This document shows, piece after piece, positions 16,427-21,766 of a stretch of DNA of 64,000 nucleotides. The number at the start of each line of letters is the position of its first letter. Position 1 is the stretch's first letter. The stretch lies in the sequence record NC_042081.1. One strand, written 5' to 3'. The notes beneath the pieces were generated by a model, which did not search any database, was not told the DNA's origin, and worked only from the letters and a program-made list of their open reading frames with translations. The position numbers and the translations under genes are program-made.

Positions 16427-17668
16427 CTATTTAGTTAAGCGGTAGGCTCTTACAAATAAGTCATTATTTAATAGACTTTCTAAAGTATCTTCTAATTCAG
16501 TAGCCCGTTTATCTTTACGACGCTGGGGACTAAGGAAATCTAAAATTTTATCAAAAATGGTCCACTCATTAGCTAAATCATTTATCAATGAATCAATTAC
16601 TTTAATGTCATCATCAATTCCTGGTTTTAGTGATGAGTCCTTTACCCATTTAAGTTGTGCTACTAGATCTTGTTTAATTTTCATTAAACGTTGTCGTTGT
16701 TTGTCATAACGTGAACTAATTGGATCATATCCAACTTTTAAATTACCGGCAATGATACCTAGCGTAACAGGTAAACCAATGATCATAAATAGACCTTTGA
16801 ATACCTCAGCAGTAATATGGCTAGAAACAGATTTATATTCACGGTCATTATAATACCGACCTGATTTAGTTAATGCCGTTGCCAGTGGCCTTCCATAACC
16901 TAATCGAGTGGCGAATAAATCAGCTAATTGTTCATCGCGTTTACGTGATTGAACATCACCAGTTAAATGCGGACGTTGCGCTTTCTTAAATGATGATAGA
17001 ATGACTTTACGAATATTTCCTTCAGTCCTATCATTAGCAAACTTCTCATAATCGGCTGGATCAACGTTTTTCTTTAACCATGTTTCATCCAATAATTGAA
17101 TCTTATACTTATTAGCTTTCCTACCCTGTAAGATAAGTATACCTTCAGTAAGTGCATAGTTAAGATAGACGTAGTCACCCATTGTAGCCAGTGTTTCCCA
17201 ACAATGCCCAATTTCATGTAATGTAATGGCAGTAGCTTCTGCTATACTAACACGGTTAATAGCCGATAATAAACCAATAGATAAACCGACCTTGTATTTA
17301 AAAGTTGAAACAGCCTCACCCGTAACTTTTAAATTTGTTAAATCAATATTAATGAATGTATTGACACCTTGCTCAGTTGCTAAAGTAACTCGATTAATAT
17401 TGTCAAATTTACTACCAGTATGTCCAACTGTAAAGGATGTGTATGCACCACCCATTATACCCTGATCATCCAGGTGTGTAAACTCTATATTCATATTGAG
17501 GATCTTAGAAACATCATCACTCAGTGACCTAAAATCATTAATATCTATTCTCTGTTGATTATCTAATTTATCACGAATCTTGGTTAGATGTTCTTCGATC
17601 AATGGACCTAAGTCACGCTTAACATTCACATCTAACACTTCATTAGAGATTTCTATCGTATGTAGCAT
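16427..17668 (-). CDS. Virion-associated protein with zinc-metallopeptidase motif, phiKZ gp84-like
   Basis: HEIGH (HExxH) plus downstream EQLADLFA..LGYG..LA.AL, typical of M48/zincin peptidases. Confidence 0.65.
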   Translation of the reverse strand: MLHTIEISNEVLDVNVKRDLGPLIEEHLTKIRDKLDNQQRIDINDFRSLSDDVSKILNMNIEFTHLDDQGIMGGAYTSFTVGHTGSKFDNINRVTLATEQGVNTFINIDLTNLKVTGEAVSTFKYKVGLSIGLLSAINRVSIAEATAITLHEIGHCWETLATMGDYVYLNYALTEGILILQGRKANKYKIQLLDETWLKKNVDPADYEKFANDRTEGNIRKVILSSFKKAQRPHLTGDVQSRKRDEQLADLFATRLGYGRPLATALTKSGRYYNDREYKSVSSHITAEVFKGLFMIIGLPVTLGIIAGNLKVGYDPISSRYDKQRQRLMKIKQDLVAQLKWVKDSSLKPGIDDDIKVIDSLINDLANEWTIFDKILDFLSPQRRKDKRATELEDTLESLLNNDLFVRAYRLTK

Positions 17669-19290: not shown

Positions 19291-19315
19291 AAACCCTCCC
19301 GTAATGGGAGGGTTT
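19291..19315. terminator. Bidirectional terminator
   Basis: AAACCCTCCC-GTAAT-GGGAGGGTTT followed by TATG. Confidence 0.8.
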
Positions 19316-19387
19316 TATGATGTGTCGAAGTTTATGTTAGCAGTAATGATCAATTGATAATATTTAATTAGGAATACCTTCCATTTT

Positions 19388-19756
19388 TTAATATCCTTCA
19401 TTAAGTAGTTCTGCTAGAGCACGTGCCTGTGAAATATCAGTAGAAGCAAAAACATCAGAAAGATAGTTATCATGTTCTTTTGCATTCTGACGCAATTCAT
19501 CCATTAGATGTTTATTAGATACCGCCCATACTTTCCACAGATTTTTATAATCATCATATTTGGGATTATACCCGTCTAGTGGTGGTTTTCCTTTACCAGC
19601 TTTCCAATGGTTGGAGTATATGCGATATCCTTTACAATCTAACTGCCAAGCTTCCTCAATTGTTCTGCCATCAGGAAGCCTTGCGTAAAGAGCCGAGAAT
19701 CTTTTGTCACCAACAGATGAACATTCATATCCTCCTCGGCGCTTCCACTGATATAT
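19388..19756 (-). CDS. Unannotated ~122-codon ORF with no ATG/GTG/TTG start (ATA start or -1 frameshift from the upstream gene); possibly NADAR-like
   Basis: My translation: IYQWKRRGGYECSSVGDKRFSALYARLPDGRTIEEAWQLDCKGY...SQARALAELLNEGY*. It fills the gap between the polymerase-exonuclease stop and the terminator. Confidence 0.7.
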   Translation of the reverse strand: MYQWKRRGGYECSSVGDKRFSALYARLPDGRTIEEAWQLDCKGYRIYSNHWKAGKGKPPLDGYNPKYDDYKNLWKVWAVSNKHLMDELRQNAKEHDNYLSDVFASTDISQARALAELLNEGY

Positions 19757-21672
19757 TACTTTGGGTTCTTATAGGTATTAATAAACTTCTCTAGCAGGGT
19801 GTCCATTTTAGGAGCACCCATGATCTTCTGTGTGATTTCAATAGCATTAACCCTACCACCTGTTAAGTTTACGCCAACTTCACGGCGATGGTGTTCACTA
19901 ATTCCTTCCATCATTGAGAATTCCATCACACATGTTTCACGTGCAATATTTAGAATCTGACTAACGTTAGGATATGTCGACACGATGTCAAGGTCGGCGA
20001 TATGACAGAAGATTAAGGTTTTATAATTCGGTAAATCTTTAACACACTGCAATCCATTTGGACCTGCCATGTATGATGGTAGTGTAACAATCCAATCATT
20101 ATGGCCAATAACATATTGATCAAGTTCATGCACCATCTGATCTGAACTTGAACCAATGACACATGGCTCTGGTCTATTCAAATACCAGAAGTGCATATCG
20201 TCACATAGTCGTTTTGGGTTAGAACTAAAGTTCTTATAGTCAGATGCCTTAGAGAATAGACTTATAGAGCGACCAAGGTCATTTACTTGTTCATCAAGTT
20301 GTTCTAGTCGAATGGAGTCGATGATGTTATAAAGACCATATTTGATTTTATGCTTAGTCTGCATCTCACGGTGCCAATCGATACCACCAAGATGTGCAGT
20401 TTCTTTAAAGGTTAACTTACCAAATTCCATTACATATCTAATAGAATCACCATAGGTAAAGTTATCATTTAATATAAAATCATCCACCGGTACCCATTCA
20501 TTACTACCTACATTTTTAATATATTTAGTAATAACGCCGCCTGGTCGGTCAACTAGTTGTTTATTAAAACCTTCAATAAAATCTTCTAAGTCCTTATCAT
20601 TTTTAATGGTCGTAGATTTATCGATGTTTAGTTCTTTTCTAAGAATAGACTCTAACCGATAGTTAGGATCACGTCCTTTAGCTAATCGAGTTACTCGATA
20701 AGTTGACATAGAATCGATGCATTGAAAACTAGCGGGTGCTGTAATCCAATGCCATTGATCCTCTGGTCCTTTAGATTTAGTGACCCCAGATGCAGTGGTG
20801 GTCATAGGCTCATCAATCTTAAAATGGAAATACCTATAATTCTTAGGTACCGATGGATCAGAAAAAATATCAGCTGGATTAACGCCATAGTGTTCTAATG
20901 TTTTTAAGATTCTGCCAATGTCGAAGCTAATATTCCAGAATGCGAAGAAATCTGGTTTCCAGGTATGTAGTCGTTTAAAACATTCAATAATAATATCTAC
21001 TGGTGTTTCAACAACCATTACTTCAATATCTAGACCACGTTCTTTAATTAGATGTGATAGTACCTCTTCTTTTTGTGCTTGTTCTAATGTCTCTTTCACT
21101 GGATCTTCAATATCACTAACCCATCGTTTTAAATAGGCTAGGAAAGCTTTGTTCTTATGTGTAACTGACATACAGATAATCTGACCATCGTTCTCAGCTT
21201 CATAAACGTTGGTTTCGATGTCACCGCCAGCAACAGTGTTTAGAGAGATTAGACCAGGATAACGTTCTTGATAATCATGCTTCAGATAACAGGTTGAACT
21301 AACATCACTGCCATATAGGTAAGGACTACGCGCTAGTTGACGAAGAGATCTAGCCGAATAGTCACCTAGGATTTTACTAATCTTACGTTTCATGTCAATT
21401 TGAGTTGACATGTATTTAACTAAGTTACGCTCATATTCGTAATCTTTCTTTTCTTTATGGTTACGCATTCCTTTTGCGGTAATCCAAAAAGGACGCTGGT
21501 AGTTTTCCCACATCCTTAAATTATTTGCAGTTGTACCATCTTCAAAATGAATTCGTTCTTTAACGAAATGTGCATCTGTAAACTTACCAAATTGATCAGT
21601 ACAATAAGTAATATGTTTGGCTTCAATGCCCTTAATCTTTTTCTTATTTGTAACCTGTTGTTCATTAGACAT
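19756..21672 (-). CDS. Family B DNA polymerase, N-terminal half (3'-5' exonuclease plus motif A), phiKZ gp82-like
   Basis: ExoI GDIET, ExoII WNISFD, ExoIII YNIIDS, and polymerase motif A DLDIVSTYPN. Confidence 0.9.
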   Translation of the reverse strand: MSNEQQVTNKKKIKGIEAKHITYCTDQFGKFTDAHFVKERIHFEDGTTANNLRMWENYQRPFWITAKGMRNHKEKKDYEYERNLVKYMSTQIDMKRKISKILGDYSARSLRQLARSPYLYGSDVSSTCYLKHDYQERYPGLISLNTVAGGDIETNVYEAENDGQIICMSVTHKNKAFLAYLKRWVSDIEDPVKETLEQAQKEEVLSHLIKERGLDIEVMVVETPVDIIIECFKRLHTWKPDFFAFWNISFDIGRILKTLEHYGVNPADIFSDPSVPKNYRYFHFKIDEPMTTTASGVTKSKGPEDQWHWITAPASFQCIDSMSTYRVTRLAKGRDPNYRLESILRKELNIDKSTTIKNDKDLEDFIEGFNKQLVDRPGGVITKYIKNVGSNEWVPVDDFILNDNFTYGDSIRYVMEFGKLTFKETAHLGGIDWHREMQTKHKIKYGLYNIIDSIRLEQLDEQVNDLGRSISLFSKASDYKNFSSNPKRLCDDMHFWYLNRPEPCVIGSSSDQMVHELDQYVIGHNDWIVTLPSYMAGPNGLQCVKDLPNYKTLIFCHIADLDIVSTYPNVSQILNIARETCVMEFSMMEGISEHHRREVGVNLTGGRVNAIEITQKIMGAPKMDTLLEKFINTYKNPK

Positions 21673-21748: not shown

Positions 21749-21766
21749 GCCTCCCCTAGGGGAGGC
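21749..21766. terminator. Terminator hairpin
   Basis: GCCTCCCC-TA-GGGGAGGC flanked by CATAA and AATATG. Confidence 0.75.

What the first reader, a model, noticed from the sequence alone, without database searches (positions are those of the whole stretch)
19388..19765. Hidden start-less gene behind the polymerase-exonuclease subunit: -1 frameshift at C CCA AAG or ATA start; NADAR-like
Seen: the gp82-like gene ends AAC CCA AAG TAA. C CCA AAG (19765-19759) is an X XXY YYZ heptamer directly before the stop. The -1 frame (CCC AAA GTA ATA TAT CAG TGG...) is open to 19388 and has no early ATG/GTG/TTG. Its ATA sits exactly where a TAATG coupled start would be. Established: AAG-ending heptamers slip in bacteria (dnaX). 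Inference: either a polymerase isoform with a ~120-aa C-terminal domain or a non-canonical start. FSAL..DG.T.EEAWQ..K and the terminal QARALAELLN loosely resemble NADAR domains, which remove ADP-ribose from guanine and could counter DarT-type defence at the replisome. I found no stimulatory hairpin 5-9 nt downstream.
Basis: partly seen in the sequence, partly recalled or inferred. Interest (0 to 1): 0.75.

Follow-up and report, generated by a model that had tools for sequence, protein, structure and literature searches.

The report
Frameshift-extended jumbo-phage DNA polymerase subunit
The "start-less" gene behind the phiKZ-type DNA polymerase N-subunit is almost certainly read by ribosomes that slip back one base at C CCA AAG just before the stop codon. 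This makes a second, longer polymerase isoform carrying an uncharacterised, loosely NADAR-like enzyme domain.

Summary
The window is a Phikzvirus. The gp82 (DNAP-N) gene ends AAC CCA AAG TAA. The -1 frame is open from one codon before the heptamer down to 19388 and encodes an intact, strongly conserved 122-aa domain (phrog_9995). ATA sits where relatives have ATG or GTG.

Forty distinct polymerase/domain junctions from related jumbo phages settle how it is expressed:
- All 25 junctions with the domain in the -1 frame carry an in-register C CCA AAG, G GGA AAG or A AAA AAG. These are the three best bacterial -1 frameshift heptamers.
- The "start" position is not conserved (ATA, GTA, ACA, ACT, GTT, or none).
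- Synonymous sites of the heptamer are frozen, and the domain is under purifying selection (dN/dS 0.03-0.2).
- Other lineages have the same domain fused in frame to the polymerase, separated from it by an in-frame TAG, or fused to Rhc, the polymerase's third subunit.

Programmed -1 frameshifting is therefore strongly supported. An ATA start or a dead gene is not.

NADAR membership is not shown: Pfam and profile-profile comparisons fail. The best, non-significant fold matches are NADAR proteins, and the fusion partners are those typical of NADAR and Macro domains. No paper found mentions this isoform.

The parts
19756..21672 (-). Gene for the N-terminal subunit of the split B-family DNA polymerase (DNAP-N, phiKZ gp82 homologue). 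It is 638 aa and is the zero-frame product.
   Evidence: ORF list. phrog_3011 DNA polymerase, E 4.5e-242. The region tested is 100% identical to PA7/KTN4/SL2. gp82 = DNAP-N, 638 residues, in preprint 10.64898/2026.09.30.755723.
19759..19765 (-). Slippery heptamer C CCA AAG in the polymerase zero frame; the proposed -1 frameshift site.
   Evidence: Sequence. Present in register in 14 distinct related junctions, and replaced by G GGA AAG or A AAA AAG in 11 others. CCA, AAG and the preceding third-position C are invariant in 12/12 lineages although the preceding amino acid varies. It is one of the three most efficient E. coli -1 motifs (PMC4066793).
19756..19758 (-). Zero-frame stop TAA directly after the heptamer. 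It ends the 638-aa product and is the likely pause that favours slippage.
   Evidence: Sequence. A stop directly follows the heptamer in 14 of the 15 C CCA AAG / G GGA AAG junctions.
19769..19771 (-). Stop codon (TAA) in the -1 frame one codon upstream of the heptamer. It limits any productive shift to the heptamer.
   Evidence: Sequence. The -1 frame is open from codon -4 only.
19388..19765 (-). -1-frame reading CCC AAA GTA followed by 122 codons and the stop. Together with the polymerase it gives a predicted 761-aa trans-frame isoform with junction ..NPK-VIYQWK..
   Evidence: Sequence and translation. There is no canonical start before codon 85.
19391..19756 (-). phrog_9995 domain (122 aa), a compact alpha/beta module of unknown function with many invariant charged residues.
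   Evidence: phrog_9995, E 1.6e-55, over the full profile. 500+ homologues, mostly about 122-130 aa with their own Met. AlphaFold model pLDDT 96. dN/dS 0.03-0.2.
19754..19756 (-). ATA at the position where stand-alone family members and PhiPA3 have the start codon. Here it is most likely just an internal Ile codon of the fusion.
   Evidence: Alignment of junctions. The position is ATG, GTG, GTA, ACA, ACT, GTT or missing in relatives.
19291..19315 (-). Intrinsic terminator closing the polymerase + extension transcription unit.
   Evidence: 10-bp G+C-rich stem followed by a T-rich tail. No terminator lies between the polymerase stop and the ORF.
21749..21766 (.). Palindromic terminator-like hairpin just upstream of the polymerase gene (it scores on both strands). 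It marks the other end of the unit.
19388..19504 (-). The 38-aa 'PHIKZ082.1'-type ORF annotated in public records. It is only the C-terminal third of the hidden ORF.
   Evidence: Annotations of phiKZ, KEN19 and ANB1. phrog_33573 consists of such fragments.
19639..19728 (-). A 29-aa ORF called in some records, in the polymerase zero frame after its stop. It is probably spurious.
   Evidence: Annotations. It overlaps the conserved -1-frame domain.

Best explanation
The polymerase N-subunit gene and the 'hidden' ORF form one recoded gene.

Most ribosomes stop at TAA (19758-19756) and make the 638-aa DNAP-N. A fraction slip back one base at C CCA AAG: tRNA-Pro moves from CCA to CCC and tRNA-Lys from AAG to AAA. 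The adjacent stop codon in the A site probably helps. These ribosomes continue in the -1 frame through GTA ATA TAT... and make a 761-aa isoform, DNAP-N with a C-terminal phrog_9995 domain.

Shown by comparison:
- the signal is conserved and interchangeable;
- the domain is under selection without a start codon;
- the same domain is fused in frame to this polymerase, or to its partner Rhc, in other phages.

Inferred:
- the efficiency is modest, because the motif has no RNA stimulator here;
- the domain is an enzyme of the NADAR-like functional niche, processing an ADP-ribose-type or N-glycosidic adduct or nucleotide derivative;
- fusion tethers the domain to the replisome, and possibly carries it into the phage nucleus, so that it acts on the DNA being copied.
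For: 1. Heptamers. All 25 distinct junctions with the ORF in the -1 frame have an in-register V_VVA_AAG heptamer from which the ORF is open: C CCA AAG x14, G GGA AAG x1, A AAA AAG x10. These are exactly the three most efficient E. coli -1 motifs (PMC4066793).
2. Start codons. Only 6 of the 25 have a canonical start at codon 1 or -1. The rest have ATA, GTA, ACA, ACT, GTT or no counterpart. In A AAA AAG lineages the polymerase stop lies 4-79 nt downstream of codon 1, so reinitiation is implausible.
3. Synonymous sites. CCA 12/12, AAG 12/12, and the preceding codon's third base is C in 12/12 although the amino acid is N, P, S, L, A or V. Background third-position C is 0.19, and the other invariant Pro column uses three codons.
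4. Selection. dN/dS is 0.03-0.2 in start-less lineages and all family-invariant residues are kept.
5. Natural in-frame fusions:
- P0226/L074, 698 aa, phrog_3011 + phrog_9995, next to a PhiKZ_MCP gene, seen on 2 contigs.
- L045.
- L031, which differs from 201phi2-1 by one C and encodes exactly the predicted trans-frame junction.
6. Rhc. The same domain is fused to the N-terminus of Rhc-like RNase H-clamp proteins (P0214, P0216). Rhc is the third polymerase subunit (preprint).
7. Shift window. The -1 frame is closed one codon upstream of the heptamer.
8. Transcription unit. A single unit is bounded by terminators.
Against: - There is no direct protein or ribosome-profiling evidence. No paper found reports a longer gp82, and recombinant gp82 (638 aa) + gp50 is active and structurally complete.
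- No stimulatory RNA structure or upstream SD-like element is present in this window. Bare motifs give only about 0.3% (up to about 4%) in E. coli.
- Six relatives do have ATG or GTG, so a free protein may also be made there.
- One clade (D6/Psa21) has the ORF in the +1/-2 frame, where simple -1 slippage cannot apply.
- The tRNA-Lys repertoire of the host was not examined.
Confidence: 0.82

Rival explanations
1. The ORF is an independent gene. It is translated from the non-canonical ATA, or by termination-reinitiation at TAA-TA, and gives a free 122-aa protein.
For: - ATA sits exactly where PhiPA3 has TAATG, and stand-alone homologues start there.
- Six related junctions have ATG or GTG there.
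- Most family members are free-standing small proteins.
Against: - The position is GTA, ACA, ACT or GTT, or has no counterpart, in 19 of 25 -1-frame lineages with intact ORFs. Several of these are two mismatches from AUG.
- No SD-like sequence precedes ATA.
- In A AAA AAG lineages the polymerase stop lies 4-79 nt downstream of the domain's start position.
- This model does not explain the frozen synonymous sites of the heptamer.
Confidence: 0.1
2. The ORF is a recently inactivated gene (ATG to ATA mutation) decaying in the phiKZ lineage.
For: A single-base difference from PhiPA3's ATG. Annotators call only fragments.
Against: - The region tested is identical or near-identical in 47 Phikzvirus records with no disruption.
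- dN/dS against phiKZ is 0.027 and against PhiPA3 0.026.
- All invariant residues are retained.
- Start-less intact ORFs occur in many deep lineages.
Confidence: 0.02
3. The frame change happens at the RNA level (transcriptional slippage or editing) rather than on the ribosome.
For: The A AAA AAG lineages contain runs of six A. dnaX-like genes in some bacteria use transcriptional slippage (PMC5009743).
Against: C CCA AAG and G GGA AAG have only three-base runs, far below the roughly 9 A/T needed for efficient slippage. The register-specific X_XXA_AAG pattern is the signature of tandem tRNA slippage.
Confidence: 0.03

Closest known systems
E. coli dnaX tau/gamma (-1 frameshift at A AAA AAG)
   Same: A replisome component is made in two isoforms from one gene by -1 slippage on an X_XXA_AAG heptamer. 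Related organisms reach the same outcome by different means (PMC5009743), as seen here with three heptamers, fusions and an in-frame TAG.
   Different: In dnaX the shift truncates the protein and is boosted by an upstream SD-like element and a downstream hairpin. Here the shift extends the protein by a whole domain. It occurs at the last two codons next to the stop, with no detectable RNA stimulator in this window.
Phage tail assembly chaperone G/GT-type frameshifts and T7 capsid 10A/10B (from memory)
   Same: Phage genes in which a minority of ribosomes shift -1 near the end of an ORF to add a C-terminal extension. Lambda uses G GGA AAG (recalled, not checked here), the heptamer found in locus L027.
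   Different: Those cases are structural or assembly proteins. This one is the catalytic N-subunit of the replicative DNA polymerase, and the extension looks like an enzyme.
IS3/IS911 OrfAB frameshifts
   Same: They use the same heptamer class. C_CCA_AAG, G_GGA_AAG and A_AAA_AAG were the top motifs when tested in the IS3/IS911 context.
   Different: IS elements rely on pseudoknots or hairpins. None is conserved here.
NADAR / YbiA (PF08719)
   Same: - The best TM-scores of the AlphaFold model are to YbiA 2b3w (TMq 0.53) and Phytophthora NADAR 8bau (0.43).
- Weak BFVD hits are dominated by NADAR and DUF4326 proteins.
- A similar motif order is visible: FS.. / DG+ / T.E..YQ..K.
- The domain has the same fusion partners as viral NADAR and Macro domains: DUF4326 and SLOG (PMC9503650).
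   Different: - No Pfam hit, no PDB sequence hit, hhalign probability 0.1%.
- Foldseek E-values are above 0.5.
- The domain is about 40 residues shorter than NADAR.
- Equivalence of catalytic residues was not established.
Split chimallivirus DNA polymerase DNAP-N/DNAP-C/Rhc (bioRxiv 10.64898/2026.09.30.755723)
   Same: This is the same gene. gp82 residues 589-638 form part of the palm-insertion domain, to whose last residue the extension would be attached.
   Different: The published complex was made from the 638-aa product only. No longer isoform or downstream ORF is mentioned.

Membership tests
Programmed -1 ribosomal frameshift site (bacterial X_XXZ_ZZN type) | Slippery heptamer in register with the upstream zero frame | tested here: met
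   C CCA AAG at 19765-19759 with CCA and AAG as zero-frame codons. 25/25 related -1-frame junctions have V_VVA_AAG in register.
Programmed -1 ribosomal frameshift site (bacterial X_XXZ_ZZN type) | Downstream ORF open in the -1 frame from the shift site and lacking its own conserved start | tested here: met
   Open from 19768 to 19391. The first canonical start is codon 85. The start position is not conserved in relatives.
Programmed -1 ribosomal frameshift site (bacterial X_XXZ_ZZN type) | Conservation of the heptamer beyond what the encoded amino acids require | tested here: met
   CCA 12/12, AAG 12/12 and preceding wobble C 12/12 with variable amino acid. 28 of 33 invariant-residue columns use several codons.
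Programmed -1 ribosomal frameshift site (bacterial X_XXZ_ZZN type) | Stimulatory element (downstream structure, upstream SD-like sequence, or adjacent stop) | tested here: inconclusive
   A stop codon directly follows the heptamer. There is no significant downstream fold (z -0.7) and no SD-like sequence upstream in this window. Some relatives have GAGG or AAGG 7-11 nt upstream.
Programmed -1 ribosomal frameshift site (bacterial X_XXZ_ZZN type) | Trans-frame protein actually made | not testable with these tools
   No proteomic or Ribo-seq data on this ORF were found.
NADAR (PF08719) | Match to the family profile | tested here: not met
   No Pfam hit at E<=1. hhalign against a YbiA-family alignment: probability 0.1%, E 0.47, 13 columns. 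That YbiA profile was shallow (>=61% identity).
NADAR (PF08719) | NADAR fold | tested here: inconclusive
   The model (pLDDT 96) has its best TM-scores to YbiA (0.53) and NADAR 8bau (0.43), but with Foldseek E about 4.5-4.8. Best viral NADAR hit: E 0.52, probability 0.41.
NADAR (PF08719) | Catalytic residues and hydrolysis of ADP-ribosyl-guanine or other N-glycosides | not testable with these tools
   Only a motif resemblance was seen. No superposition or assay was possible.
phrog_9995 (uncharacterised phage protein family) | Full-length match to the family profile | tested here: met
   E 1.6e-55, residues 2-122 on profile positions 2-123 of 124.
Non-AUG (ATA) initiated gene | Near-cognate start conserved in relatives and preceded by a ribosome-binding site | tested here: not met
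   The position varies (ATA, GTA, ACA, ACT, GTT, absent). No SD-like sequence upstream.

The most novel reading that the evidence does not exclude
Pseudomonas-infecting nucleus-forming jumbo phages use translational recoding to bolt a previously unrecognised, NADAR-like de-modifying enzyme onto their replicative polymerase or its Rhc partner. The recoding takes several forms: -1 frameshifting at three different heptamers, probably -2 frameshifting, stop read-through, or outright fusion. The replisome would then itself remove ADP-ribose-type adducts from template DNA inside the phage nucleus. This would be a replisome-coupled counter-defence against DNA-ADP-ribosylating systems such as DarT.
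Probability: 0.2. Interest if true: 0.9.

Novelty: new member of a known kind. Interest (0 to 1): 0.74.

Why it matters
- phiKZ is the model nucleus-forming jumbo phage, and its polymerase structure was only just reported from the 638-aa product. A second, longer isoform carrying an enzyme-like domain would change the parts list of that replisome.
- It would explain a gene that every public annotation breaks into meaningless fragments. A spurious PHROG family made of those fragments would also be explained.
- It would be a clean natural example of a frameshift next to a stop codon without an RNA stimulator.
- The interchange of three heptamers, in-frame fusions, an in-frame TAG and a +1/-2 arrangement in one gene family is a compact natural experiment in how recoding signals evolve.
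- The domain family is large: more than 500 clusters. It also occurs in giant multi-domain proteins, where it is fused to DUF4326, SLOG, RNase H, helicase and AlkB-like modules. Assigning its chemistry would annotate many phage and mobile-element proteins.

Tried and rejected
- **Sequence libraries for the domain:** Pfam, NCBIfam and PADLOC scans gave nothing. PDB sequence searches with the single sequence and with a profile gave only noise such as uL3 and mS48.
- **Profile-profile comparison:** hhalign against a YbiA-family alignment was not significant.
- **RNA features:** folding downstream of the heptamer in the window and in 25 relatives showed no conserved stimulator. A GGAGGA/UCCUCC hairpin exists only in the PhiPA3/Pawinskivirus-like subgroup and starts 17 nt away. 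Rfam gave only sub-threshold terminator look-alikes.
- **Structure of a fusion:** AlphaFold of the natural fusion P0226 gave low confidence for the polymerase part (pTM 0.39). The domain is well folded after a disordered linker, so there is no docking information.
- **Literature and supplements:** searches for a gp82 frameshift, PHIKZ082.1 or Ribo-seq of phiKZ found nothing.
- **tRNAs:** there are no tRNA genes in the window.
- **Within-window significance:** the heptamer is not significant on its own.
- **TAG reassignment:** I considered this for loci L040 and L044. No in-frame TAG occurs inside their polymerase ORFs, so read-through or another route is more likely.
- **Link to the LF domain:** I considered that the polymerase's 'little finger' insertion co-occurs with the domain. 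Several loci with the domain match the polymerase query only from residue 77 onward, so no strict link is evident. This was not tested properly.
Full report
**What is in the window**

The window is a Phikzvirus. Bases 19300-19900 are 100% identical to phages PA7, KTN4, SL2 and about 30 others, and 95-99% identical to 13 further Phikzvirus records, 47 records in all.

On the minus strand a 638-aa ORF (21672..19756) is the N-terminal subunit of the split B-family DNA polymerase (phrog_3011, E 4.5e-242). It corresponds to gp82 = DNAP-N of the recent cryo-EM preprint 10.64898/2026.09.30.755723.

The gene ends AAC CCA AAG TAA:
- The heptamer C CCA AAG is 19765-19759 and the stop is 19758-19756.
- The -1 frame reads CCC AAA GTA ATA TAT CAG TGG... 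and is open to the stop at 19390-19388.
- It has no ATG, GTG or TTG before 19504.
- The -1 frame is closed by its own TAA one codon upstream of the heptamer (19771-19769). A productive shift can therefore only occur at the heptamer.

Public records annotate only a 29-aa ORF and a 38-aa ORF ('PHIKZ082.1') in this stretch.

**The hidden ORF is a real, conserved domain**

Counted from ATA (19756-19754), the 122 codons match phrog_9995 over the whole profile (E 1.6e-55). The protein database holds more than 500 clusters of homologues. Most are 120-130 aa with their own Met at exactly this position.

All 25 family-invariant residues are present in the window's copy. dN/dS is 0.027 against phiKZ, 0.026 against PhiPA3, and 0.05-0.2 between other start-less lineages. 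It is not a pseudogene.

**How it is expressed: comparative evidence**

I collected loci around the 3' end of the polymerase gene from annotated phages, IMG/VR and metagenomes. I then analysed 40 distinct junctions.

In every one the phrog_9995 ORF directly follows or overlaps the polymerase 3' end. The junctions fall into these classes:

| Class | Junctions | Arrangement |
|---|---|---|
| a | 14 | ORF in -1 frame; C CCA AAG, followed at once by a stop (in 201phi2-1, one codon later) |
| b | 1 (L027) | ORF in -1 frame; G GGA AAG TAG |
| c | 10 (Noxifer and relatives) | ORF in -1 frame; A AAA AAG lies 3-39 nt before the domain, and the polymerase zero frame runs on, stopping 4-79 nt past the domain's first codon |
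| d | 11 (D6/Psa21 clade) | ORF in +1/-2 frame; invariant GAA AAG AAG |
| e | 2 (L040, L044) | ORF in frame, separated only by TAG |
| f | 2 (L031, L045) | ORF fused in frame |

A third, independent in-frame fusion came from the protein library. P0226/L074 is 698 aa, with phrog_3011 at residues 29-541 and phrog_9995 at 560-677. It lies next to a PhiKZ_MCP gene and was seen on two contigs.

All 25 junctions of classes a-c thus have an in-register V_VVA_AAG heptamer from which the ORF is open.

The codon at the 'start' position is ATA, ATG, GTG, GTA, ACA, ACT, GTT or has no counterpart. Only 6 of the 25 have a canonical start there.

Sharma et al. 2014 (PMC4066793) measured all 64 heptamers in E. 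coli. C_CCA_AAG, G_GGA_AAG and A_AAA_AAG were the three most efficient: up to 54% with a pseudoknot and about 0.3% bare. The three heptamers found here are exactly those three.

Locus L031 differs from 201phi2-1 by one extra C in the C-run. It encodes in frame the very junction that a -1 shift would give in 201phi2-1. This may be a real constitutive fusion or a homopolymer sequencing error.

**Synonymous-site test**

I compared 12 C CCA AAG lineages whose synonymous sites are otherwise largely saturated:
- Pro is always CCA. The only other invariant Pro column uses CCT, CCG and CCA.
- Lys is always AAG.
- The codon before CCA encodes N, P, S, L, A or V but always ends in C, against a background third-position C frequency of 0.19.
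- Of 33 invariant-residue columns, only 5 use a single codon, and two of those five are the heptamer.

This is the signature of selection on the nucleotide sequence itself.

**Stimulators**

In the window I found no significant downstream structure (z = -0.7) and no SD-like sequence upstream.

A hairpin formed by GGAGGA/UCCUCC exists in the PhiPA3/Pawinskivirus-like subgroup only, and it starts 17 nt from the heptamer.

The adjacent stop codon is the only candidate stimulator. 'Shifty stop' frameshifting is an established concept (PMC5009743), but it was not tested here. Efficiency may therefore be low, which would suit a sub-stoichiometric isoform.

Terminators flank the polymerase + ORF unit and none lies between them.

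**Rivals**

- *ATA start or reinitiation.* This cannot explain the lineages with ACA, ACT, GTT or no counterpart. It also cannot explain polymerase stops lying up to 79 nt downstream of the domain start, or the frozen heptamer. It may contribute where ATG or GTG exists.
- *Pseudogene.* Excluded by the selection analysis.
- *Transcriptional slippage.* Unlikely for three-base runs.

I put programmed -1 frameshifting at about 0.8.

**What the domain may do**

AlphaFold with a 56-sequence alignment gives a confident compact alpha/beta model (pLDDT 96.4, pTM 0.89).

Fold comparisons:
- Foldseek finds no significant PDB match.
- The two highest TM-scores are E. coli YbiA (2b3w, TMq 0.53) and a Phytophthora NADAR bound to ADP-ribose (8bau, 0.43).
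- Against viral models, the hits after true family members are dominated by NADAR and DUF4326 proteins. The best NADAR hit has E 0.52 and probability 0.41.

Sequence methods do not support membership:
- There is no Pfam hit.
- hhalign against a YbiA-family alignment gives probability 0.1%.

Context is more telling. The domain occurs inside many 2,000-6,000-aa proteins. One of these has a weak match, below Pfam's cut-off, to the polyvalent-protein ADP-ribosyltransferase domain.

Among 74 mid-sized multi-domain relatives, the partner domains are:

| Partner domain | Relatives |
|---|---|
| DUF4326 | 16 |
| SLOG (YAcAr, cpYpsA) | 4 |
| RNase H | 2 |
| DUF488-N3a | 1 |
| AlkB-type 2OG oxygenase | 1 |
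| Guanylate kinase | 1 |

A larger relative (1,110 aa) carries a PIF1-like helicase, and another carries RNase H.

Iyer et al. [quoted passage not shown] This domain therefore sits in the architectural slot that NADAR and Macro occupy.

Two representatives (P0214, P0216) are Rhc-like RNase H-clamp proteins with the domain at their N-terminus. Rhc is the third subunit of this same polymerase. Fusion to two different subunits of one machine argues that the domain works at the replisome.

My reading is inference, at about 0.35-0.4. The domain is an enzyme that removes an ADP-ribose-type or other N-glycosidic adduct, or processes such a nucleotide derivative. It is tethered to the polymerase, and fusion possibly also carries it into the phage nucleus.

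In an N4-like Achromobacter phage the free-standing homologue is the third gene from the left end. I recall the left end of N4-type genomes as the early region, so this may point to a host-conflict role.

**Comparison with what is known, and novelty**

- The mechanism is classical bacterial -1 programmed frameshifting, as in dnaX, IS3/IS911 and phage tail chaperones.
- It is unusual in sitting on the last two codons next to the stop, without an RNA stimulator, and in extending a catalytic polymerase subunit by an enzyme-like domain.
- dnaX is the closest parallel. It too gives a replisome protein in two isoforms, reached by different routes in different organisms.
- The full-text searches returned no paper describing this isoform. 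The two 2026 preprints on this polymerase and the 2025 phiKZ antisense screen, which I read in part, do not mention it.
- I classify it as a new member of a known kind, involving an uncharacterised domain family.

**Limits**

- All evidence is comparative or predictive. No product has been observed.
- L031 and L045 come from metagenome assemblies and may contain errors (L045 has a frame break further upstream in the polymerase gene). P0226/L074 is clean.
- The NADAR profile I could build was shallow.
- The host's tRNA-Lys set was not examined.

Noticed in passing
L010, L011, L016, L018, L020, L024, L032, L034, L035, L036, L059 (D6/Psa21-like phages), about 10-20 nt before the polymerase stop: In this clade the same domain ORF lies in the +1 (= -2) frame of the polymerase gene. 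All 11 distinct junctions keep GAA AAG AAG at the nucleotide level. The codon at the start position is GTG, TTG, CTG, ACG, CGG or TCG. A -2 slip of tRNA-Lys from AAG onto the AAA two bases back would enter the ORF frame; own initiation is possible in only some lineages. Unexplained.
   Followed up: partly
L040:2266-2268 and L044:2266-2268: In two divergent lineages the polymerase ORF and the domain ORF are in the same frame, separated only by TAG followed by C (TAG CTA / TAG CTG). There is no canonical start. No other in-frame TAG occurs in their polymerase ORFs, so stop read-through (or CTG initiation in L044) is suggested rather than TAG reassignment.
   Followed up: partly
P0214 and P0216 (L075:4001-5812): Proteins of about 600 aa have the phrog_9995 domain fused to the N-terminus of an RNase H plus C-terminal region. 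This region matches the phiKZ-type 'ribonuclease H' (Rhc-like, 24.5% identity over 78% of the query). The domain is therefore attached to a different subunit of the same polymerase complex.
   Followed up: partly
L004 (PhiPA3) about 930-1300 and L009 (HPP-Temi) 1-1160: The polymerase N-subunit gene of PhiPA3 and HPP-Temi is interrupted just before the motif-A segment IVSTYPNVSQ by an insertion. In HPP-Temi the insertion is annotated as an HNH endonuclease. In PhiPA3 the 3' part of the polymerase gene is left unannotated. It looks like an intron or homing element in the catalytic motif.
   Followed up: no
window 19388-19504 and 19639-19728 (minus strand); phrog_33573: Public annotations of Phikzvirus genomes split the hidden ORF into a 38-aa ORF ('PHIKZ082.1') and an out-of-frame 29-aa ORF. 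PHROG family 33573 (38-aa profile) appears to consist only of such C-terminal fragments.
   Followed up: yes
L004, L008, L009, L019, L023, L057, L061, 17-55 nt after the heptamer: A stable hairpin pairs GGAGGA (Gly-Gly codons) with UCCUCC (Ser-Ser codons). It is conserved in the PhiPA3/Pawinskivirus-like subgroup (about -18 to -21 kcal/mol, z down to -2.8) but weak in phiKZ. It is too far from the heptamer for a classical stimulator, and its role is unknown.
   Followed up: partly
window 16427-17668 (minus strand): The 413-aa ORF next to the virion protein gene contains an HEIGH (HExxH-type) motif, suggesting a zinc metalloprotease. Not examined further.
   Followed up: no
window 21749-21766: A perfect palindromic G+C-rich hairpin (GCCTCCCC TAGG GGGAGGC) between the gp81-like gene and the polymerase gene scores as a terminator on both strands.
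   Followed up: no
PMC12571901: Antisense knock-down of phiKZ gp82 was reported to induce the host Pf4 prophage. The oligomer would silence both isoforms, so any role of the extension is not separated from that of the polymerase.
   Followed up: no
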